This document shows, piece by piece, positions 5,804 through 41,459 of a stretch of 64,000 nucleotides of DNA. Under the pieces are notes generated by a model. The model searched no databases and was not told where the DNA came from. It worked only from the letters and a program-made list of their open reading frames with translations. The stretch spans positions 1 to 64,000 of the IMG/VR virus record IMGVR_UViG_3300024239_000014. One strand, given 5' to 3'. The number at the start of each line of letters is the position of its first letter. The first letter of the stretch is position 1. The translations under genes were made by a program, and so were the position numbers.

Positions 5804-6637
5804 ATGTCTGGTGCCATCCAAAAAGCGCTTGATGAAATCTTTTTCCAGATTCCGATCGAGGTACTGCAACTAGCGTTCACCTCACAAAACATCTTCCTGA
5901 CCCAACGTCAGGTCAGCATTCCCGCCATGATCCGCGAAGAAGTGATCGAACGACGCGTTCGCATCGATCTCGATTGCGCAGGGGCTTCGCAAGTAGCGAT
6001 CCCGCTGACCGGACTGGTACCCGAGTACCTGGATCAATACACCCGGGTGTTTATCATCCCTGCTTCGTTGACCGATGGTCGTTCAATCAGCGCAACGCTG
6101 AGTGTCTCCTTTGGCCAATACGGGATGTACGGTTATCCGAATGCCCTGAGCCAAGGTCAGTTCAGCGCAGGGATGCCGGGTACGGATCAGTCGGTACTGA
6201 CCAACATGATCGATAACCTGAACAATGCACGTCGTCCTATCGCTCAGGTATCTTCGGCAAATGTTCGTCTGATTGCCGAAAACACTGTGATGATCACCGA
6301 GGTCATTCAACCTACCGCTGAGCTGTACCTGAACTGCCTGCTGGGCAGCGATCAAGAACTGACTCACATCCAGCCGCCGTATTGGCCGATGTTCTCTGAA
6401 CTGGTGGTGTGGGCTACCAAAGCCTACGTGTACCGCAAGCTGAACATCCAGCTCGATACCGGTGCGCTGGTAGGCGGTCAGGGACTGGGACGTATCCGTG
6501 AAGTCGTGGACGGCTACAGCGATGCTGAGCAGACTTACCAAGACATGCGTCGAGAAAAGCTCGGGAAGATGCTCTTCCTGAACGACCCGACACGGCGTAA
6601 GCAGCATCTGCGTCTGCTCATCGGTGGCGGTAACTGA
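5804..6637 (+). CDS. phiKZ-like putative virion structural protein, 277 aa
   Basis: GGAG RBS; followed by hairpin+TATGCCG; family assignment from recall and position near phuZ. Confidence 0.65.
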   Translation: MSGAIQKALDEIFFQIPIEVLQLAFTSQNIFLTQRQVSIPAMIREEVIERRVRIDLDCAGASQVAIPLTGLVPEYLDQYTRVFIIPASLTDGRSISATLSVSFGQYGMYGYPNALSQGQFSAGMPGTDQSVLTNMIDNLNNARRPIAQVSSANVRLIAENTVMITEVIQPTAELYLNCLLGSDQELTHIQPPYWPMFSELVVWATKAYVYRKLNIQLDTGALVGGQGLGRIREVVDGYSDAEQTYQDMRREKLGKMLFLNDPTRRKQHLRLLIGGGN

Positions 6638-21831: not shown

Positions 21832-22758
21832 TCAACCTCTCCAGTGATCAAGGCAACGACGGTAATTGGTGGAGAAGACGGCAAAGTTATCGCCCTTGTT
21901 ATAGGAGCGATGCAAGATATCACCCAGACGGGTCTTCTTCCCACCGCGGTCGTTGATGGCTTCGTAAACGAGAACGGTGAACGTCGGTGGGTGTTCCAAT
22001 GCGACGGCCACCATTTCACGAGCATGTTGACCCATCCAGCTACCTGCCAGAATCTGAATCATGATAGCCGGCGTGAAGTTCTCCAGACGGATGGACCAGT
22101 TGCGTTCTCTGACTGCCTGACAGAATTCGGTCAGATTGCCGATAAACGGCACACCGTCCAACGCTTCCTTAATAAAGGCTGTCCCGATACCGGTAACGCG
22201 TGACAGGTTGGACTCATGCATGGTGCGGTTCATGTCGTCGCCGTTTTCTTTAAACTGGCAGCTATAGAAGTGTGCAGCGATGCAGGCGATTTTGGCCTGT
22301 ACTTCCGGTGCGAGGTTGTACTGGCGTGACACCACTTCAGACACCCAACGTTGATACAGCTGATGAGGAATCGGCGAAATGTTACGGATGTCGGAATAGT
22401 GTCCGTTGTCCCAACACTGTTGCATAACAGCGCGAGCCAGGAGCATCGCGAATTCGTTACGAGAGCGCAGCGATGGCGACGCGTTTCGGTCAGCGCGCTG
22501 TGATACCATCGACCGTGCATCGATGGCGATACGGTCTTCACCGTCTACGGTTTTAAAGTGGATCGGATGGGCGAAAGGCTTGATAATCACACTCTGAAAA
22601 CGAAGCGGAGTGACTACGATAATGTTCGTGTTGACCTGTTCAGTCAACACAGGTTCAACGCCGATTTCATTGACCACCAGCGCCTTAGCCAAAGCCTGCT
22701 GGATTTCAACCAGGTTGTATCCGCGGCAGGCGGTGGTGCTGTAGGGAGAAATAATCAT
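21832..22758 (-). CDS. conserved phiKZ gp28-like protein
   Basis: 308 aa with ALEHPPT motif; synteny. Confidence 0.65.
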   Translation of the reverse strand: MIISPYSTTACRGYNLVEIQQALAKALVVNEIGVEPVLTEQVNTNIIVVTPLRFQSVIIKPFAHPIHFKTVDGEDRIAIDARSMVSQRADRNASPSLRSRNEFAMLLARAVMQQCWDNGHYSDIRNISPIPHQLYQRWVSEVVSRQYNLAPEVQAKIACIAAHFYSCQFKENGDDMNRTMHESNLSRVTGIGTAFIKEALDGVPFIGNLTEFCQAVRERNWSIRLENFTPAIMIQILAGSWMGQHAREMVAVALEHPPTFTVLVYEAINDRGGKKTRLGDILHRSYNKGDNFAVFSTNYRRCLDHWRG

Positions 22759-22824
22759 GTGGACCTCTGGTTTACGTTAACTTTTAGGGAATACCGTAAT
22801 AGGCCAAAACATTTTAATGTTTAT

Positions 22825-23188
22825 GACGTGCGGTTGTTCCCGCTGTCGCATGCCTATACGATTTGAGTCTCCATCGGCATCGATGGCGATTTCTCGACTA
22901 TACCCCGATTTTCGTAAGAAGTCGCGGCACTAAAGCCTGGTCGATTAGCTCTACTACGATAGCGCTATCGTGGTAGGTATCCAACGTGCAACGATAGGTG
23001 GTGGCTGAGTAGGCTACTTATAGTTGGTGGTGTAAATCTGTCCTGGGGTAGCAGGGTTGCTTTTCATCACGTTAAACCGTTGAATACAGTCGGCGTAACT
23101 CAGACCTTCTCTGGTAGGTTACCAGACAAAAGACGTCTTTTGTAAACCCTCAGTTGCAGGAATATACCCCCTGCTCAAGGAGTCGTTA
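22825..23188 (+). ncRNA. long structured 5' leader or ncRNA upstream of the tail sheath gene
   Basis: TATG at 22822-22825, then ~360 nt with many stems whose G-U pairs and GNRA loop favour the + strand. Confidence 0.5.
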
Positions 23189-25261
23189 ATGACCGCGATT
23201 CAGAACGCGGCACCGCAGTATGTGCTTGATGGTATCAAGGACAACAGTGGTCGTCGTGCCGATCCGGAGCGCGAAGCGCTTCCTATTCACCTGCCCCTCG
23301 TGTTCTTCTACGCCGAACGTGGTCCGTCGGCCGCCCAGATCCTGACTGGCGGTGACGCCCGTCGTCTCTACGGTGCCAAGACCTTTGACTATCGTGGTGC
23401 TTACGCCAACCATGCAACTGCCCTGTTGCAGGAAGCCCTTTATCCGGGCAGCGGTGCGGTCATGCACCAGCGCGTGATCCCCGCTGATGCCCGCAAAGCT
23501 CGTCTGGCCGTCTACCTGGACCTGCTCGAAACCGCAATCCCGGTCTATGAGCGCAACAGCGACGGTTCGTTCCGTCTGGATACCAACGGCGACCGCATCA
23601 GTACCGGTAGTACTGTGCCGGGCTATAAAGGCAAGTGGGTGGTGGAAGCCATTCCGCCTACTGGTATTGGCGCACGTGCCATCGGTGCTGCTGTGCAGCT
23701 GCCGGGTACCCAGAATGACGGCGAATACGGCCAGTCGGTGAAATACCCGATCTTTGACGCCGAAGTGTCGTTCGAAGGCAAATACGGCGACAACGTTGGT
23801 TTCCGCCTGTATGCTCCGACCACTCGTTCTGCACTGCCGGTTAACCCGTCGCTGGTGACCGACCTGAACGCCTACGTCTTCCGTCTCCAGTTCCTGGAGC
23901 GTCCGACTGCTCAGTCGACTCCGAACATCATTCGCACCCGCGAAGATGAAGTGGCCGTTGACTTCTGTCTGAAGCCGGACTCGTTCCACGACAAGACCAA
24001 GCGTGAATACGGTATGGCCGAAGCGGTACTGCCGGCTTACAGCGACAAGACCATCGGGGTTGCTCCGACCTTCTCGCCGTTTGGCACTTTCCACGCCTAC
24101 CAGAACAACATCGACACCGTACTGAGTCTGATCTACGAAGGCGAAGAGAGCTACATGGGCCTCGGCGCCGGCATTGACGGTACCTACCTGATCGACCCGT
24201 TCACTGGAACTACGGTTGATGGCGTACCGTACCACACCTACGAGGTGGTTGGTGTGCTGGATGGCGGTGCTGCGTTCAACGACAGCGCTGTGTACTATGC
24301 CAAAGACGGTACTGACGGCACGATGTCCGATACGGCCTTCGACCTGCTCGTTCGCAACGAGCTCGAGAAGTACGGCGAACTGGAAAACCGTTACCTGGAC
24401 GAACTGCGCTTCCCGCACTCCTTCGTCTACGACAGTGGCTTCTCTGTGGAAACCAAAGAAGCGCTCCTGTCGCTGCTGTCCCGTCGCAAGGACATCATCC
24501 CGATCGTTTCGACTCAGGATGTGTCTCAGCCTCAGAACAGCCAGACTGTGGAATCGTCGATGGGTGTGGCGCTGGCCACTGCTGCGCGTTTCCATCCGGA
24601 ATCCGTCCTGCACGGTACCGGCGTCTGTCGTGCGGCCATCATCGGCCAGTCGGGTTACCTGATCAATTCGACCTACAAGAAGCTCGTACCGATGACTTTC
24701 GAAGTCGCGTACAAGCTGGCTCGTTGGGCCGGTGCCAGCAACGGTATCCTCAACGAACGTTGGGCGCCGGATGTCAGCCCGAACAACAAGCTCGAACTGC
24801 TCACTCGCGTCAACTGTACCTACAAGACCGCCGCCGTCCGTAACAAGGACTGGGTCAACGGCGTGGTGTGGGCGCAGTCCTACGACACCATGTCAGACTT
24901 CATTCCGGCGATTCAGACTGTCTATGGCGATGACACTTCGGTGCTCAACAGCCTGCTGGTGGTCATCATCGCATCGGAACTCCAGAAGGTCTGTATGCGT
25001 GTCTGGCGTGACCTGGTCGGTCGTACCGATCTGACCAAGGATCAGTTCAAGAAGAAATCCGACCAGCTGATCACCCAGTATGGTTCGGAAACGCGTTTCG
25101 GTAACCGTGTCCGTATCGTTCCCGATACCCACTTTACCGTACGTGACGAGCAGCTGGGCTACAAGGTCTCGGCTAACATCAATCTGTACGCCAACAACAT
25201 GATCTCCGTCGGGAGCTTCACCATTGTGGCGGACCGTATGGAGGCCTTGAACAATGGCTAA
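23189..25261 (+). CDS. tail sheath protein (phiKZ gp29-like)
   Basis: 690 aa; NAAP..GIKD N-terminus, PIHLPL, YDSGF, YPES-like motifs; directly upstream of the tube gene. Confidence 0.88.
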   Translation: MTAIQNAAPQYVLDGIKDNSGRRADPEREALPIHLPLVFFYAERGPSAAQILTGGDARRLYGAKTFDYRGAYANHATALLQEALYPGSGAVMHQRVIPADARKARLAVYLDLLETAIPVYERNSDGSFRLDTNGDRISTGSTVPGYKGKWVVEAIPPTGIGARAIGAAVQLPGTQNDGEYGQSVKYPIFDAEVSFEGKYGDNVGFRLYAPTTRSALPVNPSLVTDLNAYVFRLQFLERPTAQSTPNIIRTREDEVAVDFCLKPDSFHDKTKREYGMAEAVLPAYSDKTIGVAPTFSPFGTFHAYQNNIDTVLSLIYEGEESYMGLGAGIDGTYLIDPFTGTTVDGVPYHTYEVVGVLDGGAAFNDSAVYYAKDGTDGTMSDTAFDLLVRNELEKYGELENRYLDELRFPHSFVYDSGFSVETKEALLSLLSRRKDIIPIVSTQDVSQPQNSQTVESSMGVALATAARFHPESVLHGTGVCRAAIIGQSGYLINSTYKKLVPMTFEVAYKLARWAGASNGILNERWAPDVSPNNKLELLTRVNCTYKTAAVRNKDWVNGVVWAQSYDTMSDFIPAIQTVYGDDTSVLNSLLVVIIASELQKVCMRVWRDLVGRTDLTKDQFKKKSDQLITQYGSETRFGNRVRIVPDTHFTVRDEQLGYKVSANINLYANNMISVGSFTIVADRMEALNNG

Positions 25262-26144
25262 TGATCCGCTGAGCTATCTGCTCGCCTCCGGTCAAACCGG
25301 TCGCAAAGGCTTTCTCGAAGGCACTGTATCCGATGTTGCGGATGTCACCAAGGGTGGTCAGATGGGCTTCATGCCCGACTACACCACCATCAATGCGAAC
25401 GTCCCGTACGTTCGCAAGAACATCTTCGCCGTCGTGATTCAGGCACCGCTGGGTTTCGACGACCTGCCGGAACCTGATCTGTGGTACTCGGCCTTTAAGG
25501 CCATGGTCGAACGTCATCCGACTCGTATCGAAGGTCTGCGTTCCACCGTGAACGTGGAATGGGTGGAAACCCCCGTCGGTGGTGCCGGTGAAGTTCAGCA
25601 GGACGTTGGTAACGTGACGCGTGAGCGTTCCGAGCCGGCGTTCACCTGGCAGGAGAAACTCGGTCGTCCGTTTACCCGCTTCCTCGAAAGCTGGATTACG
25701 GAACTGATGGGCGATCCCAACAGCAAGGTGCCGAACGTCATCACTCGTGGTCTGCGTAAGACCCCGAACATGCTGCCGCAGTACAAGTCGGCCACCGTGA
25801 TGTTCATCGAGCCTGATGTGACTCACACCAAGGTCGAAAAGGCCTGGCTGTGCACCAACATGATGCCGAACATCTCCGGCCCGATCGAAGGTAGCCGCGA
25901 CATCACCGCCGGCGGCGAAATCCTGGAAATCAGCGTGACCTTCAGCGCCATCACCCAAGTGGGTTATGGTGTTGATACCTACGCGCAGAAACTCCTGGAC
26001 GACCTGAACCTGGTGGGTGCAAACCCGATGCTGGCTCCGGCTTTCGTTGACGGCATCGACCCCGATGTTTCTTCGAAGCAAGTGGGTTACATGGATCAGG
26101 TCAAGAAGGCTCGTGAGACCTTCCTGACTCGTTCTCCGACCTAA
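25254..26144 (+). CDS. tail tube protein (phiKZ gp30-like)
   Basis: 296 aa overlapping the sheath stop codon; FIEPD..AWLCTNMMP motif. Confidence 0.85.
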   Translation: MANDPLSYLLASGQTGRKGFLEGTVSDVADVTKGGQMGFMPDYTTINANVPYVRKNIFAVVIQAPLGFDDLPEPDLWYSAFKAMVERHPTRIEGLRSTVNVEWVETPVGGAGEVQQDVGNVTRERSEPAFTWQEKLGRPFTRFLESWITELMGDPNSKVPNVITRGLRKTPNMLPQYKSATVMFIEPDVTHTKVEKAWLCTNMMPNISGPIEGSRDITAGGEILEISVTFSAITQVGYGVDTYAQKLLDDLNLVGANPMLAPAFVDGIDPDVSSKQVGYMDQVKKARETFLTRSPT

Positions 26145-36860: not shown

Positions 36861-37988
36861 TTAACTGTCTTCAAAAAAGAGGGCAGCCCCAACTTTCGAG
36901 CCTTCCAGCATCAGTCGGCTCATGATACCGATCTGATAAGGAGAACCCACGATACGGTTAAAAATCGACATGTGTCCGAACTTGCCGTCCAGCTGCAAAC
37001 CGGACTCGGTTTCCATCACCCCTTCGTACGTTCGACAGGTTACGGATTTCAGCTGGTTACCAAACACCAACTTATCACCGCCGCCGTAGTCTTCTTCGTA
37101 GGTAATGAAATAACGCACCGCCACGGTATCCTGTTCAAGTGGATACCCTTCGATTCGTACCCGGTCCATGACTTCGCCGTCTTCTGCTTCGTCGTTCCGG
37201 AGTTTCCGGACCAATGCAGCGCGTTTACGGTTGTAGGCTTTCACCAACTCCCGCAATGAGTCGGACATGTCTTCGAGGTCCCCTCGATAAAAGACCTCAA
37301 TCTTTTCCACCGTACCCTCGACTTTCGCCTTGGGTGTATGGGATGACAGCATCTTCAAAGTGTCCAACGACATCTCGTCGAAGAGCCCTGAATTGGCCGT
37401 CAGTTGGTCTTCAATCGTACATAGAATTGAGTCAGAGTCAACGATTTCGCCCTCTTTCACAATCCCACGGACCTCTTGGTCGAACTTCAAAATCACTGCT
37501 TTGACTTTCGTGAGTTTGGTCTTAAGCTTCTCGGCAGAACGTGACATCAACGCCGAGGAGTCCTCAAACGTATCTGCGTCATCAAGGATCGCCACGTTAA
37601 ACAGTGCGCCAGATTTCCACAACACCTGTGTCGGGTAGAAGTGGTCTCTGACGAACCAGTGACTATTCCAAGCCAAGACATCGCCCTTAACGAACGATTG
37701 ACCAACCACCACATCTGTTTCTACCTGATGTGGATAGCAACTCCCTTCAGCCCGCCCGAAGCGGCGACCGAGTTCTACCGACGTAACGGTCCCGTCTTTG
37801 TACTCGATCAACAGATGGTTCGGGCTAACCTCTTTCACCATCCCATCAGCCGTCGCAGCAAATGCGTAAAGGTCGCCCACACGCTTAGACAGGACATTTT
37901 CATATCCGGTCACAGTCGGCATGTAGGTATAACCTTCAGCAGCAATACCTGACGATTGTTGGATGCTGGCAAAGAGGGCACGTTTCAT
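36861..37988 (-). CDS. virion RNA polymerase beta-like subunit (gp178-like), exon 2
   Basis: MKRALFASIQ, TFEDS, GDKLVFGNQLK (RpoB GDK motif). Confidence 0.9.
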   Translation of the reverse strand: MKRALFASIQQSSGIAAEGYTYMPTVTGYENVLSKRVGDLYAFAATADGMVKEVSPNHLLIEYKDGTVTSVELGRRFGRAEGSCYPHQVETDVVVGQSFVKGDVLAWNSHWFVRDHFYPTQVLWKSGALFNVAILDDADTFEDSSALMSRSAEKLKTKLTKVKAVILKFDQEVRGIVKEGEIVDSDSILCTIEDQLTANSGLFDEMSLDTLKMLSSHTPKAKVEGTVEKIEVFYRGDLEDMSDSLRELVKAYNRKRAALVRKLRNDEAEDGEVMDRVRIEGYPLEQDTVAVRYFITYEEDYGGGDKLVFGNQLKSVTCRTYEGVMETESGLQLDGKFGHMSIFNRIVGSPYQIGIMSRLMLEGSKVGAALFFEDS

Positions 37989-38330
37989 CTAATGTCTTCA
38001 ATGTGGCCTAACCACACCCGTGCACCGCATGCACTGCTCCAGGTTTTCCCTGGATGTAGAGACTATATCTTCACCCTCGCTGGATTTGCGATAGGGTGCC
38101 TCCCATTTCGGCGGATGCCTACGAGCTCGCGCTCTAGTCGTTGAACGTTCTTCCCAGTAGGAAGCTTCGCTGCGGATTACCCAATCCCAGTCTCTTTTAC
38201 CATACCCAAGTGATTAGCTTGGCCACCTGTACATTACTGTTACAAGCTTGGTGTACTGGGCTTTCAGTGGATTCCCGTCAGTTAGAGAGGATTCGCTACC
38301 GGATTACGCCGGTAGAGGACTATGTAAATA
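37989..38330 (-). mobile_element. group I intron, 342 nt, no internal ORF
   Basis: P (AACUGACGGGAA 38283-38272), Q (AAUCCGCAGC 38178-38169), R (GUUCAACGACUA 38146-38135), S (AAGAUAUAGUC 38071-38061); P1 with U-G wobble at the 5' splice site; terminal G; splicing gives in-frame HDD|MKRAL. Confidence 0.93.
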
Positions 38331-41300
38331 ATCGTCGTGAACGATCGAGGGTGACAGGTTACCAGTAGTACTCAACACCGATGTCAACCCGTCGCCATTC
38401 TTGTCGAACGCTCGTGTGACACCATAAAGGTTGGTGAAGTTCGGATCAGAAGACAGGTAGGTGTTCACCGCCACTTCAGACGAGTCCACCGTTGCTTCAG
38501 AAACCACCCCGAAGTCAGAATCATCGTACGCACGTGTGCTGCGCACCATGGTGCGACTACTGCGACCGCCAGTACCACCAAAGGTCACAGCTTCCTGTTC
38601 TTTCAAGTGGTGAACCGGGTTGATGTCCTGCACCAGTGTGATACTCGGATCGCTCTGAATTGCATTCCATACCGCATTGGGCTTGATGTCAATGCTGGCT
38701 CGACTCGTTACCGGTTTTCCATGGTACTGTTTCAGCGCCATAGCCAATTCACGATACACGGCACCGGCAATACGCTCGTAGCCTTTGAATCGATCTGGAC
38801 GGTGTTCCACTTCATCATTCTGAAGCATTTCCACGGAGCGGAAAAGCAGCCCATCAAAAGTGGTTGGTTCCTGGTAGCTTTCCAGCAACGTCTTCGTGAT
38901 CGGATCTACGAAGTGCAGCATCAGCACATCAAGCTCACGCAGCTGTCTGGCTGTCATCCCAAGCCCATCGAGCAGGTTCAGGTAGACATCCTGCCGGTTG
39001 AACTCCTTCACGGAATAGTGCGACATCTGCCGGTGGAAACGGTTCATGCCAGAAAGCACCAACGCTGCTTTTCGGTCGTGGCGCGACAGAGCCCAGGTTT
39101 CATCCTTAAAGCGCAGTGAATATTCACCATGCTCCAGGGTGGCCTTTTGCCCCTTGGGAATACGGCGAGGTGTTACCCCCAGTCGTCGGCAGAGTTCGTC
39201 CAAACCGAAGTAGTAGCCGAAGACAAACCCGAGCGGGATTTCCTTACCGGCCACTTTTATCTCGATCTGTTCAATCGGCGCTTGGTTGTTATCAAAACCA
39301 ACCAGATCGCCAATATCGCCCACTGGCATTGGTTTACCGTCTTCCGTGGTATAAAGCGCATCGCGATCATCGACGTACAGGAACTTCGAGTTGTCTTCAC
39401 GTCGTCCCATGACCACCAAGCCGTCGATCTCACCTGCCAAGGCATCTGCACCAAAGAAGGCGGCGCGGTTGTCGTAGTCGAAGTTCAACTCCCAGCCATT
39501 TACGGTAAAGCCGATAAAGCGACTGGTCAGGATGGTGTACAGACGAGGAAGGCGCGACCCCTTCTTCCGACCCTGGGTTTTGTACGCCAGCTTGGAAACA
39601 GTGGCGTTATCACCCATTGACATGTAGATGATGCGGTTCTGCAACCACCGACCGTAGTTGTGCACGGCCTTCTCAGAACGTTTCACAAAGAGCTTGCCGT
39701 AGTAGCTGGTCAAAGCCACTTTATCCGGAGCCACCTTGTGGATCGGACAATCACCTCGTTGCTTACGCAGACGGTATTTCACGCCATCGGCCACCCAGCT
39801 ACCGTCTTCAGCCACGACCGGCAGCTCGATCCGCACGGTCGTGGGTTTGCCAGCCACTGGGACCAGTTTAACAGTGATCACGTCGTATTTGTTCAGAGCG
39901 TCTTTGACGCGCTCTACTTCGTACGACGTCACGGCAACACCCGAATGCTGCAGCGACATGATCATCCGCGCTACGTCTCGATGCAGGACGTCTTTGATGT
40001 ACGCCTTGTCGAAATCGAGCAGCGTACTTCTCAGCATGGTCTTGTCAGTGACTGCTTCATGGTCAGTTACAGAGAGTCGTTCGGGCTTCAACGAAACATC
40101 GCTGTCTTTGACATCAATCAAGTCAGCCAATGTCCCTTGACCAAAGGGGTTTTCGATGGACTTGTAACTGTTCGCCAGTTTTTCAAAGCGACGAAATTCG
40201 GCTCCAGAAATCATAGCGTGTTCAAGCAAGCGTTCAGCGCTGTGGATTACACCGAGTTCCGGTTTCGCAGTCAGGTCAATCGCCGCTTTACTTTCATTAC
40301 CCACCTGCCCCAGTTCCACACCAGGGATGTGGAGCTCAAACAGATCGTCATTCCAAATGTCCACAGCACCTTCTGCCAGAGCTTCGAGTTCTTCGCGATA
40401 CTCGTCAGCTTCTTTTTCAGACATTTCAGGAATGGCGGCTTCCTGCTCTTCTGGCATCGGTGTATCTTTCAGACGTTCAGGTACGGTAGCGCCTGGTGCT
40501 TCGCTACCGCTGTCGCTTTCATCGTCAGTGTCGTGGACTGGCGGTAGATCACTGTCTTCTTCGACAGCATCGACCTGTACTGCGGTGAAGACGTTTTCAG
40601 CACGCAGCTTGGCGAGTTGGATAAAGAAGTAGTAGACCTTCCGTTGAAAGGTTTCCATGCTTGCATCGATGACATCACCATCGGTCTTTGCACGCGCTTT
40701 GCGCCACCCATCCAATTGACCGAGGTTGATCACCCCACCCTGACCGTTATCAGTAACCACCAGGTTCACACGAGCCAGAGCCTCGGGCTTGATTTTCGAC
40801 AGCAACGACTCACCGTGCTTCTTACCAGCCCAAGTCCACAGGTCGAGCAGAAACATCGACTCGTACGTCGACAACGATTCCACCACGTTTTTAGACAGGC
40901 TATTTTCACCCATCTTCAACAGCGCTAACCGCGGCAGGTGTTGCGGTAGGTTGATGTGGATGTAATGCTGACGATCGCTCTGGATAGCAATGTCGTTGAT
41001 GGTTTCGATCATCGTGGCAAAAATGTTCTGCCAACGATAATAGTTTGCCATGAAGTTAACGGGGTAGCGGTACAGATGCTGGAGTAACGCGTAGTTGATA
41101 ACCAGGGTAGACCGCAGGTCACGATCCACCATGTCAAACTGCCGCACCCGTCTGAGCAGACGGTTCTTCTTCTCCAGGTCGCGGATTGCAGTACCGGCAT
41201 TGATAGACCCCATGCGAATAGGTCTACCTACTTCACTTTTAAGTTCTGCCACATGCTGACAGTACAGCAACCCGCCCTTGCGCTGAATGAACGGGTCGTT

Positions 41301-41459
41301 GTTATCCAACGACCGTTCTTGTGTGTTCAGTGGCAGATAATGGTACACCGGCCGTAGGGGAAAGGCCAATTCAACCAAGGGCTTAAATGCAAAGCCTGTC
41401 AGTTGTTGCTCTTTCCACACCCCGTTCTTACGGTAGTACTGTGGGTATTTTAAAAACAT
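38331..41459 (-). CDS. virion RNA polymerase beta-like subunit (gp178-like), exon 1
   Basis: GTGGRS.R.M and SEATVDS motifs; ends in HDD; spliced product 1418 aa. Confidence 0.9.

What the first reader, a model, noticed from the sequence alone, without database searches (positions are those of the whole stretch)
22822..23188. ~360-nt highly structured leader in front of the tail sheath/tube operon
Seen on the + strand after TATG: CCAUCG/CGAUGG (22871-22886); a GUAA-capped stem (22906-22924); an 11-12-bp stem with G-U (22951-22976); a G-U-rich stem (~22995-23020); UCUGGUA/UACCAGA (23110-23126); palindrome ACAAAAGACGTCTTTTGT (23126-23143); and GCAGG/CCUGC (23156-23174) just before the AAGGAG RBS. 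AGCAGGG (~23050) could alternatively pair with CCCUGCU (~23169-23175). Such a long non-coding gap is exceptional in this dense window. Inference: a translational switch/autoregulatory leader or a processed structural RNA.
Basis: partly seen in the sequence, partly recalled or inferred. Interest (0 to 1): 0.62.

Follow-up and report, generated by a model that had tools for sequence, protein, structure and literature searches.

The report
Long structured leader before sheath gene
A giant phiKZ-like phage carries a conserved, roughly 365-base, ten-hairpin non-coding stretch between the late promoter and the start of its tail-sheath gene; base-pairing is kept by matching mutations in related phages, so it is very probably a functional RNA leader, of a kind not yet catalogued and of unknown role.

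Summary
Window 22759-23188 is a 430-bp non-coding gap between two divergent genes: a gp28-like vertex protein on the - strand and the tail sheath plus tube on the + strand. The only TATG in the gap (22822-22825) matches the phiKZ late-promoter motif. It is conserved, with its downstream context, in front of sheath genes of all 13 phiKZ-like lineages inspected.

In most of those lineages the leader is 64-161 nt (about 220 in RP12). Only the window's clade, three sequenced lineages with sheath 69-99% identical, has a 359-367-nt leader.

- Alignment folding is far better than column shuffles (z -6).
- H4 and H5 each show many double compensatory changes (1/500 shuffles each).
- H5-H6 sequence identity is no higher than at four-fold degenerate sites, yet the pairing is kept.
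- G·U pairs and local energies favour the + strand.
- No small ORF is conserved, and there is no Rfam match.

Best reading: a clade-specific, structured 5' leader of the sheath-tube late mRNA that acts in cis on stability or translation. Transcription itself is not shown.

This is a new, uncatalogued RNA motif of a known general kind. Interest is moderate.

The parts
21832..22758 (-). Context: gp28-like vertex-binding virion protein gene (308 aa), first gene of the divergent leftward structural operon
   Evidence: PF25614 PhiKZ_VTX, E 3e-76, aligned 1-304; phrog_3227
22759..22821 (.). Shared upstream region: probable 5' UTR and RBS (GAGG) of the gp28-like gene on the - strand, and the upstream part of the sheath promoter. 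Almost invariant in four lineages.
   Evidence: Identity 0.98 (L007) and 0.80 (L008), against 0.55-0.75 in the flanking CDS. L013 has only 3 differences in 104 nt.
22822..22825 (+). TATG, late-promoter motif of phiKZ-type non-virion RNA polymerase; inferred transcription start at G22825
   Evidence: It is the only TATG in the gap on either strand. It is invariant in L007, L008 and L013. TATGA plus a similar downstream context precedes the sheath genes of L009, L010, L018, L019, L003-L006, phiKZ and RP12. The motif T-3ATG+1 is defined in PMC4666361. The genome encodes a gp68 homologue and a beta-like subunit.
22826..22852 (+). H1, a hairpin at the very 5' end of the inferred transcript (CGUGCG.../...CGCAUG, or GACG-GCGG/CCGC-GUC)
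   Evidence: The same CGUGYG...CGCAUG arms occur in L018 and L019, whose sheath is only ~50% identical.
22853..22864 (+). Conserved single-stranded box CCTATACGATTT. On the - strand it reads TATAG (22858-22854). This is positionally equivalent to a - strand TATG in most other lineages, so it is probably the promoter of the gp28-like operon.
   Evidence: Invariant in 4 lineages. A - strand TATG lies 24-37 nt downstream of the + TATG in L009, L010, L018, L019, L004, L005 and phiKZ, and TATAG takes its place in L003 and L006.
22865..22892 (+). H2, an 11-bp interrupted hairpin with 2 G·U pairs
   Evidence: The inner stem CCAUCG/CGAUGG is replaced by CUACC/GGUAG in L008, with two pairs changed on both sides (hand count).
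22894..22944 (+). H3, a three-way junction. The outer stem is 22894-22900/22938-22944. H3b is 22906-22912/22918-22924, with a GUAA-containing loop. H3c is 22926-22928/22935-22937.
   Evidence: The loop reads GUAA in the window, GCAA in environmental variants (22915 T>C) and GUGA in L008. L007 rewires H3c into an extension of H3b.
22951..22976 (+). H4, a 13-bp hairpin with an invariant apical palindrome and a covarying base
   Evidence: 97% of cells are paired and 5 of 11 pairs are changed on both sides, reached by 1/500 shuffles. The environmental variant 22953 A>G turns an A-U pair into G·U.
22989..23026 (+). H5, a 13-15-bp hairpin of fixed length with an invariant loop GCUGAGU (23004-23010) and a freely covarying stem
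   Evidence: 8 of 15 pairs are changed on both sides, reached by 1/500 shuffles, and the slid controls collapse. Local MFE for H5+H6 is -27.5 on + against -9.5 on -.
23027..23070 (+). H6, a long irregular hairpin, variable in sequence and length
   Evidence: It is predicted in all three lineages. Sequence identity is only 0.37-0.53, which is about the four-fold-site level. Its tip in the window looks like a terminator (23040-23057), but this is not conserved.
23092..23103 (+). Conserved single-stranded GGCGURACUCAG. The ACUCAG (23097-23102) is complementary to the H5 loop CUGAGU, and its ACUC to the GAGU of the ribosome-binding site.
   Evidence: Invariant apart from one R position. It is unique in the genome. 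Duplex with the H5 loop is -8.6 to -9.5 kcal/mol; with the SD region it is -6.3 (window) and -12.6 (L008). The pairing itself is inferred, not shown.
23110..23126 (+). H7, a 7-bp hairpin
   Evidence: 95% of cells are paired and 2 pairs are changed on both sides (54/500 shuffles, weak).
23127..23142 (+). H8, an invariant palindromic hairpin CAAAAGACGUCUUUUG
   Evidence: Invariant in three lineages and unique in the genome. There is no variation, so no covariation test is possible.
23156..23174 (+). H9, a 5-7-bp hairpin directly before the ribosome-binding site
   Evidence: It is GCAGG/CCUGC in the window, GCAGGG/CCCUGC in L007, and GCGA-CUG/CAGUCGC in L008, where three pairs are changed on both sides (hand count).
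23177..23191 (+). Shine-Dalgarno AAGGAG (23177-23182) and the ATG of the sheath gene (23189)
   Evidence: Homologues align from residue 1.
23189..26144 (+). Context: tail sheath (23189-25261, 690 aa) and tube-like protein (25254-26144, 296 aa), overlapping by 8 nt
   Evidence: phrog_3242 E 3e-216 and phrog_3185 E 4e-96; PF20961 and PF23806 in relatives.

Best explanation
The stretch 22825-23188 is the 5' untranslated leader of the late sheath-tube mRNA of a nucleus-forming phiKZ-like phage.

Transcription is inferred to start at the G of the TATG at 22822-22825, driven by the phage's own non-virion RNA polymerase. The first ~40 nt (5'-terminal hairpin H1 plus a conserved box) are an ancient core, shared with distant relatives whose leaders are mostly 64-161 nt (about 220 in RP12). 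In the window's clade about 300 nt of extra RNA (22865-23174) sits between that core and the ribosome-binding site. It folds into about nine further hairpins (H2-H9 and a small variable one at ~23077-23094), and selection maintains them.

Most likely it acts in cis on the sheath-tube message in two ways. First, the hairpin at the extreme 5' end and the dense stem array protect the mRNA from 5'-end-dependent decay. Second, the invariant single-stranded ACUCAG can pair either with the invariant H5 loop (CUGAGU) or with the GAGU of the Shine-Dalgarno region, which would tune ribosome access, possibly under the control of a bound protein.

Shown: the stretch is non-coding; it is conserved above the neutral level; pairing is kept by compensatory changes; there is a + strand bias; and the promoter motif is conserved. 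Inferred: the transcription start, co-transcription with the sheath gene, and every functional step.
For: Promoter:
- There is a single TATG in the gap. It is invariant in the clade.
- TATGA followed by a homologous context (ACGTG..GTCGCATG.CC(T)ATAC) stands before sheath genes whose proteins are only 42-53% identical, and before phiKZ gp29.
- phiKZ late transcripts start at the G of TATG, and the motif is bound by the beta-like subunit (PMC4666361; PMC12809450).
- The genome has gp68, beta-like and chimallin homologues.
- TTATG is about 3.6-fold enriched in correctly oriented upstream gaps (32 observed against ~9 expected, my estimate).
- No other TATG is conserved nearer the start codon.

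Conservation:
- Gap length is 430, 425 and 434 bp in three lineages, and 430 in a fourth 99%-identical contig.
- Leader identity is 0.58-0.76, against 0.34-0.46 at four-fold degenerate sites of the sheath gene.

Structure:
- alifold z is -6.0.
- H5 has 8/15 and H4 has 5/11 pairs changed on both sides, each reached by 1/500 shuffles.
- H2, H7 and H9 also show double changes.
- H5-H6 are neutral in sequence but still fold.

Strand:
- The summed local MFEs favour + in all three lineages, by 11-24 kcal/mol.
- G·U pairs number 36 on + against 17 on -.
- A natural variant, 22953 A>G, makes a G·U pair in H4.

Non-coding: no ORF survives in all three lineages.
Against: - Transcription is not demonstrated. 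The RNA-library data are assembled contigs at depth 2-4.5 that also span the divergent promoter, so DNA carry-over is possible.
- Only three independent full-length sequences exist, so covariation statistics are thin, and the shuffle controls do not correct for relatedness.
- The alignment z-score is as good on the - strand (-7.1). Strand assignment therefore rests on G·U counts, local energies and the promoter.
- Thermodynamic predictions of Shine-Dalgarno accessibility disagree between the three lineages.
- The ACUCAG and H5-loop segments are invariant, so their pairing cannot be tested by covariation.
- Part of the conservation at 22759-22864 is probably due to DNA-level promoter function for both operons, not to RNA.
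Confidence: 0.55

Rival explanations
1. The RNA is made from the same TATG promoter, but its main role is as a separate stable non-coding RNA. It would be processed or terminated out of the 5' UTR and act in trans, as proposed for the 5'UTR-derived small RNAs of phiKZ and 201phi2-1. Riding on a strong late promoter would be incidental.
For: - phiKZ has 17 candidate 5'UTR-derived ncRNAs, and a conserved sRNA lies upstream of tail gene gp182/gp277 (bioRxiv 10.1101/2023.10.13.562163; PMC11512511).
- The ~300-nt module is an addition to an otherwise sufficient short leader.
- Invariant loop and linker sequences suggest specific partners.
Against: - No conserved terminator lies inside the leader. 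The only terminator-like site (23040-23057) is specific to the window.
- The reported phage 5'UTR ncRNAs are under 250 nt and are produced by premature termination.
- There are no data on RNA ends.
- No complementary target was sought or found. The motifs are unique in the genome.
Confidence: 0.2
2. The conserved inverted repeats act at the DNA level. They could be operators for a phage DNA-binding regulator, a replication or packaging signal, or hairpins extruded in single-stranded DNA. On this reading RNA structure is irrelevant.
For: - Two hairpins are perfect, invariant palindromes: the GATAGCGCTATC core of H4, and H8.
- Conserved structure scores equally well on both strands at the alignment level.
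- The region is a divergent promoter region, where regulators are expected.
Against: - Compensatory changes in stems with free sequence (H5, H9, base of H4) are not expected for protein operators.
- G·U pairs are twice as frequent on + as on -, and + strand hairpins are 11-24 kcal/mol more stable.
- The natural variant 22953 A>G breaks the DNA symmetry but keeps RNA pairing.
- Two perfect palindromes among about ten hairpins is not beyond chance (my estimate, p ~0.14).
- The motifs occur nowhere else in the genome.
Confidence: 0.08
3. The structured RNA belongs to the - strand: a long leader, or an antisense transcript, of the gp28-like operon starting near the sheath gene.
For: The alignment z-score is slightly better on the - strand (-7.1 against -6.0). 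A sigma-70-like match lies on the - strand at 23189-23161.
Against: - There is no TATG on the - strand anywhere in the gap.
- The sigma-70-like hexamers are not conserved in L007 or L008, and phiKZ-type phages do not rely on host polymerase (PMC4666361).
- Local energies and G·U counts favour +.
- In relatives the - strand promoter motif sits 24-37 nt from the + one, which gives a short gp28 leader.
Confidence: 0.07
4. It is a functionless remnant of an insertion (a decayed gene or mobile element), and the similarity between lineages is only shared ancestry.
For: - The ~300 nt are absent from all lineages outside one clade.
- The middle part (22979-23072) is as diverged as synonymous sites.
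Against: - That same diverged part keeps its pairing through double changes.
- Other blocks are far more conserved than synonymous sites.
- Length is held at 425-434 bp.
- Column shuffles never reach the observed consensus energy.
Confidence: 0.03

Closest known systems
phiKZ late promoters and the short 5' leader of phiKZ gp29 (tail sheath)
   Same: - Same synteny: gp28 is divergent from gp29-gp30.
- The same TATGA motif lies upstream of the sheath gene.
- A second motif on the opposite strand lies 24-37 nt downstream.
- The polymerase subunits that read TATG are encoded in this genome.
   Different: - The phiKZ leader would be about 64 nt, against 364 nt here.
- The extra ~300 nt with nine or so hairpins has no counterpart in phiKZ.
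- Here the opposite-strand motif reads TATAG, not TATG.
5'UTR-derived ncRNA candidates of jumbo phages: phiKZ 5'UTR_gp40, the short RNAs before PHIKZ221 and PHIKZ302, and 201phi2-1 sRNA005 upstream of tail gene gp277 (phiKZ gp182)
   Same: Structured RNA located in the 5' UTR of a late or structural gene of a phiKZ-like phage, and conserved among related phages.
   Different: - Those are 71-250 nt and are defined by premature termination inside the UTR. Here no conserved terminator exists and the element is ~365 nt.
- Sequence relatedness to them was not tested.
- They have experimental RNA evidence; this one has none.
Translational operators and structured leaders of phage and bacterial mRNAs (T4 gene 32 and regA-type operators, MS2 coat-protein hairpin, ompA-type 5' stabiliser hairpins); from my own knowledge
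   Same: - A hairpin at the extreme 5' end.
- A hairpin with a sequence-specific loop.
- A stem next to the Shine-Dalgarno sequence.
- It controls an abundant structural protein.
   Different: - It is far larger and multi-domain.
- No binding protein is known.
- No sequence or Rfam relation.
- The resemblance is functional analogy only.
Large structured non-coding RNAs associated with phages (GOLLD, ROOL, HEARO, raiA) and group I introns
   Same: Size class of several hundred nucleotides, multi-hairpin, in a phage genome.
   Different: No match to any of the 4227 Rfam models down to E = 10, in the window or in the two relatives. The scan does detect a genuine group I intron elsewhere in the window, so it was working.

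Membership tests
phiKZ-type late promoter (nvRNAP, T-3ATG+1) | TATG motif on the non-template strand immediately upstream of a late (virion) gene | tested here: met
   TATG at 22822-22825 is the only one in the gap. It is conserved in the clade and before sheath genes of 13 lineages, including phiKZ.
phiKZ-type late promoter (nvRNAP, T-3ATG+1) | The genome encodes the non-virion multisubunit RNA polymerase | tested here: met
   gp68 homologue, E 5e-60. A beta-like ORF with PF00562, 42 bits. A chimallin homologue, E 6e-28. The other subunits were not searched for.
phiKZ-type late promoter (nvRNAP, T-3ATG+1) | Transcripts start at the G of TATG late in infection | not testable with these tools
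   Only assembled contigs of RNA libraries were available, and they show no ends or strand.
5'UTR-derived ncRNA by premature termination (phiKZ / 201phi2-1 type) | A terminator inside the 5' UTR that yields a short RNA (<250 nt) with the same 5' end as the mRNA | tested here: not met
   The only terminator-like site (23040-23057) is in the window alone. L007 and L008 have no U-tract there. Unconventional termination cannot be excluded.
Riboswitch or translational switch | Mutually exclusive pairings, one of which occludes the ribosome-binding site, conserved among relatives | tested here: inconclusive
The ACUCAG segment can pair with the H5 loop or with the SD GAGU in all three lineages, but all the partners are invariant and the predicted ensembles disagree.
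Riboswitch or translational switch | Match to a known aptamer or leader family | tested here: not met
   No Rfam hit at E <= 10 in the leader of the window, L007 or L008.
Structured RNA in general (conserved secondary structure) | Pairing maintained by compensatory substitutions beyond what shuffled controls give | tested here: met
   alifold z -6.0. H5 and H4 covariation is reached by 1/500 shuffles each, and the slid controls collapse. Caveat: only three sequences.
Small protein-coding gene | An open frame with a start and RBS, conserved among relatives | tested here: not met
   All nine ORFs of 12 aa or more in the gap are interrupted by stops or frameshifts in L007 or L008.
tRNA, tmRNA or group I intron | Detected by ARAGORN or Rfam | tested here: not met

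The most novel reading that the evidence does not exclude
The ~300-nt clade-specific module may not be a mere expression tuner. It could be a stable, highly expressed late RNA with a job of its own in a nucleus-forming phage. For example, it could be a tag or scaffold bound by a phage protein that directs the sheath-tube message out of the phage nucleus or to the site of tail assembly. Or it could be a decoy or sponge RNA against a host RNA-targeting defence, released from the leader. The invariant H5 loop, the invariant H8 hairpin and the conserved linkers would be the recognition sites.
Probability: 0.12. Interest if true: 0.78.

Novelty: new member of a known kind. Interest (0 to 1): 0.48.

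Why it matters
Jumbo phiKZ-like phages transcribe their genes with their own polymerases inside a protein nucleus, and how individual late messages are stabilised, exported and translated is poorly known.

- **A defined comparison.** This is a large, clade-specific leader RNA under selection, placed in front of the most abundant tail proteins. Relatives with 64-161-nt leaders serve as natural controls lacking the extra module.
- **An uncatalogued motif.** It adds a structured RNA motif that is not in Rfam.
- **A by-product on promoters.** The analysis supports a conserved pair of overlapping divergent late promoters between gp28 and gp29 across the phage family, and TATAG as a possible variant of the TATG start motif.

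The limits are that the phage is uncultured, the clade is small, and nothing is yet known about function.

Tried and rejected
**Searches for more copies**
- blastn of the region against 50,697 phage records found no match.
- Exact-pattern scans of IMG/VR (two patterns), JGI metagenomes and GTDB genomes found only the window's own contig.
- A search with the N-terminal 200 aa of the sheath, meant to catch truncated contigs, found nothing.

**Known RNA classes**
- Rfam at E <= 10 on the window region and on relatives gave nothing relevant.
- ARAGORN found nothing.

**Literature**
- Supplements of the phiKZ ONT-cappable-seq paper are not held. Ceyssens et al. 2014 is not held. The mapped phiKZ gp29 start site therefore could not be checked.

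**RNA evidence**
- The look-up of sequencing runs found 20 runs from 9 studies (wastewater, groundwater, subsurface). All are held as contigs.
- The two metatranscriptomic runs gave low-depth contigs over 22564-22914, ending at a polymorphic site. That shows neither strand nor ends. No support either way.

**Ideas rejected**
- The long-range pairing of ACGAUUU (22859-22865) with the SD in the alifold consensus is only 7 bp with 3 G·U pairs, and is broken in L008.
- A conserved small ORF is rejected.
- H5-like hairpins with the GCUGAGU loop do not recur elsewhere in the genome.
- A host sigma-70 promoter or an intrinsic terminator as a conserved feature is rejected.

**Technical limits**
- mafft-qinsi was not installed.
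- MAFFT alignments of H2 and H9 were not in structural register, so those two were counted by hand only.
- No covariance model was built: with three sequences, and nothing further to search, it would add nothing.
Full report
**1. Where the finding lies**

The window is the first 64 kb of a 249,640-bp IMG/VR virus record with 51.6% G+C. The finding lies in the 430-bp gap 22759-23188.
- To its left, on the - strand, is a 308-aa gene (21832-22758) that matches the phiKZ gp28 vertex-binding protein family from end to end (PF25614, E 3e-76).
- To its right, on the + strand, are the tail sheath (23189-25261; phrog_3242, E 3e-216) and a tube-like protein (25254-26144) that overlaps it by 8 nt.

The gap is therefore a divergent promoter region, not a gap after an upstream gene.

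The genome encodes homologues of the phiKZ nuclear-shell protein gp54 (E 6e-28), of the non-virion RNA polymerase subunit gp68 (E 5e-60), and of a beta-like polymerase fragment. It is therefore a nucleus-forming phiKZ-like phage.

By a crude ORF call the gap is the fifth longest of about 277 in the genome, where the median is 36 bp.

**2. The observation**

On the window sequence alone the fold is barely better than shuffles (z -1.88) and no better than the opposite strand (z -1.80). The single sequence therefore did not justify 'highly structured'. Rfam gives nothing at E <= 10 and ARAGORN gives nothing.

**3. Relatives**

Known phages are distant: the best sheath identity is 43%. All keep the gp28/sheath divergent synteny, but with gaps of 128-215 bp. 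One group (Ralstonia phage RP12) has 318 bp of unannotated sequence.

The large protein collection gave closer kin:
- a 99%-identical contig with a 430-bp gap, for which no DNA was served;
- L007, with sheath 79% identical and a 425-bp gap;
- L008, which equals L014 and L015, with sheath 69% identical and a 434-bp gap;
- L013, with gp28-like protein 84% identical, which covers only the first 104 nt of the gap.

Lineages at 48-53% sheath identity (L009, L010, L018, L019) have gaps of 133-153 bp. The long gap is thus a conserved feature of one small clade. Pattern scans of IMG/VR, JGI metagenomes and GTDB genomes found no further copies.

**4. Promoter**

The gap holds a single TATG on either strand, at 22822-22825 on +. 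phiKZ late transcripts start at the G of a TATG that is necessary for transcription by the non-virion polymerase, and that is bound directly by its beta-like subunit (PMC4666361; PMC12809450).

The motif and its context are invariant in the clade. A recognisably homologous context (TATGACGTG...GTCGCATG.CC(T)ATAC) stands before the sheath genes of L018 and L019. Looser versions stand before those of L009, L010, L003-L006, phiKZ and RP12.

The implied leader lengths are:

| Lineage | Leader (nt) |
|---|---|
| phiKZ, L018, L019 | 64-68 |
| L009, L010 | 71-78 |
| L003-L006 | 131-161 |
| RP12 | about 220 |
| Window clade | 359-367 |

No second TATG nearer the start codon is conserved.

Within this genome TTATG is enriched in correctly oriented upstream gaps. 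It often follows a G+C-rich hairpin directly, as cTTATGccg. This fits a late promoter abutting the previous terminator.

**5. The conserved box is probably a second promoter**

The invariant CCTATACGATTT (22853-22864) corresponds in seven other lineages to CCATAC-type sequences. On the - strand these read TATG, 24-37 nt downstream of the + TATG. In the window clade, in L003 and in L006 the - strand reads TATAG instead.

TATAG is about 2.7-fold enriched in upstream gaps of this genome, often 13-28 nt before a start codon.

The simplest reading is a conserved pair of overlapping divergent late promoters. Their transcripts would share the H1 region in opposite senses. On that reading, the strong conservation of 22759-22864 is partly a DNA-level constraint plus the gp28 leader, not evidence for the RNA element.

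**6. Conservation of the rest**

Four-fold degenerate sites of the sheath gene are 0.34-0.46 identical between the three lineages, so neutral sites are close to saturated. Against that baseline:

| Segment | Identity between lineages |
|---|---|
| H2-H4 | 0.62-0.83 |
| Linker + H7 + H8 | 0.69-0.82 |
| H5-H6 | 0.37-0.53 (about neutral) |

None of the nine ORFs of 12 aa or more in the gap is open in all lineages.

**7. Structure**

Folding the anchored segments separately gives the same series of hairpins in all three lineages:
- H1, 22826-22852
- H2, 22865-22892
- H3, a three-way junction, 22894-22944
- H4, 22951-22976
- H5, 22989-23026
- H6, 23027-23070
- a small variable hairpin at about 23077-23094
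- H7, 23110-23126
- H8, 23127-23142
- H9, 23156-23174
- then AAGGAG and the ATG

The RNAalifold consensus energy is -79.6 kcal/mol, against -49.7 +/- 5.0 for 200 column shuffles that keep the gap and conservation classes. That is z -6.0, and no shuffle is as low.

On gapless alignments:
- **H5:** 87% of cells are paired and 8 of 15 pairs are changed on both sides.
- **H4:** 97% of cells are paired and 5 of 11 pairs are changed on both sides.
- Each of these values is reached by 1 of 500 shuffles and collapses when partners are slid.
- **H7:** two double changes, which is weak (54/500).
- **H2 and H9:** by hand, these swap CCAUCG/CGAUGG for CUACC/GGUAG and GCAGG/CCUGC for GCGA-CUG/CAGUCGC.

H5 keeps exactly 40 nt between its anchors and an invariant loop GCUGAGU, while its stem sequence drifts freely.

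Caveats: there are only three sequences; the shuffle control ignores relatedness; and L007 rewires part of H3.

**8. Strand**

At the alignment level the - strand scores as well (z -7.1), as expected for hairpins. Three things favour the + strand:
- The summed local MFEs are -99.6, -91.9 and -105.5 on +, against -76.0, -79.8 and -94.3 on -. G·U pairs number 36 against 17.
- An environmental variant, 22953 A>G, converts an A-U pair of H4 into G·U. Another, 22915 T>C, keeps a GNRA-type loop (GUAA to GCAA; L008 has GUGA).
- The only conserved promoter motif that can read through the region points rightward.

**9. Transcription evidence**

Twenty public runs from nine studies (wastewater, groundwater, subsurface) hold the stretch, but all are served as contigs. 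In the two metatranscriptomic runs, low-depth contigs cover 22564-22914. They cross the divergent promoter and stop at the polymorphic site 22915. This neither shows nor excludes transcription, and I draw no conclusion from it.

**10. How it may work**

What the anatomy offers:
- a hairpin at the very 5' end;
- a dense array of stems;
- an invariant 7-nt loop (H5);
- an invariant hairpin (H8);
- a stem abutting the ribosome-binding site (H9);
- an invariant single-stranded GGCGURACUCAG.

The ACUCAG of that last segment is the exact complement of the H5 loop CUGAGU (duplex -8.6 to -9.5 kcal/mol). Its ACUC also complements the GAGU of the Shine-Dalgarno region (-6.3 in the window; -12.6 in L008, where three changes lengthen that pairing to 8 bp). 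All these motifs are unique in the genome.

I therefore favour a cis-acting leader with two effects. It would stabilise the sheath-tube message through its 5' hairpin and compact fold. It would tune ribosome access through competition of the H5 loop and the SD region for ACUCAG, possibly set by a bound protein.

This mechanism is inference. The partners do not vary, so covariation cannot test it, and partition-function predictions of SD accessibility disagree among lineages.

The terminator-like tip of H6 (23040-23057) is likewise specific to the window. That argues against the premature-termination route by which phiKZ and 201phi2-1 make 5'UTR-derived small RNAs.

**11. Comparison and novelty**

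5'UTR-borne structured RNAs are already described in jumbo phages, including one upstream of a tail gene that is conserved across genera (PMC11512511). So the kind is known. This element matches no Rfam family. It is several times longer than the sheath leaders of most related phages, and it is confined to one uncultured clade.

I file it as a new member of a known kind (a structured 5' leader RNA of a phage late operon) with unknown function. It is of moderate interest, mainly because short-leader relatives provide natural controls and because it sits on a message that must leave a phage nucleus.

**12. Operators' notes**

No toxin or effector gene and no animal or plant virus was involved. 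No alternative genetic code was used. Read laying was given 5,901 letters.

Noticed in passing
window 38037-38340 (- strand): A group I catalytic intron (RF00028, 78.5 bits, E 2.8e-18) lies between ORFs 36861-37988 (375 aa) and 38304-41459 (1051 aa) on the same strand. This is probably one gene split by a self-splicing intron.
   Followed up: no
window 22822-22858; also L009, L010, L018, L019, L004, L005, and L016 (phiKZ) 6270-6298: Across phiKZ-like phages the gp28/sheath gap carries a + strand TATG and, 24-37 nt downstream of it, a - strand TATG. These look like overlapping divergent late promoters whose transcripts would share 20-35 nt in opposite senses. In the window clade, L003 and L006 the - strand motif reads TATAG instead. 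TATAG is also enriched upstream of genes in this genome, which suggests a tolerated variant of the start motif.
   Followed up: partly
genome-wide; in the window e.g. 3778 (-) and 30625 (-): A recurrent module: a G+C-rich hairpin immediately followed by cTTATGccg, 22-170 nt before a start codon, in about 10 copies. It looks like a terminator fused to the next late promoter.
   Followed up: partly
window 25254-25261: The sheath and tube-like genes overlap by 8 nt, which suggests translational coupling. The same overlap is seen in L007, L008, L009 and L010.
   Followed up: no
L006 (Xanthomonas phage RTH11) 3001-5115: The sheath gene is annotated as three consecutive CDSs, and the gp28-like and tube genes are also split. 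This suggests frameshifts or sequencing errors in that record.
   Followed up: no
window 22915 and 22953: Environmental variants of the phage in groundwater and wastewater runs carry 22915 T>C (loop GUAA to GCAA) and 22953 A>G (A-U to G·U in H4). Near-identical phage DNA occurs in 9 studies of wastewater, groundwater and subsurface samples.
   Followed up: partly
L017 (Ralstonia phage RP12) 1183-1500: A second lineage has a lengthened sheath leader: about 220 nt from a TATG at 1278-1281, in 318 bp of unannotated sequence. It has no evident sequence similarity to the window's leader, so leader expansion may have happened more than once.
   Followed up: no
whole genome (G000): ARAGORN detects no tRNA gene in the 249.6-kb genome. 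Other long gaps are flagged by the crude ORF call at 191629-192334 (706 bp), 98097-98633 (537 bp) and 163424-163950 (527 bp), and were not examined.
   Followed up: no
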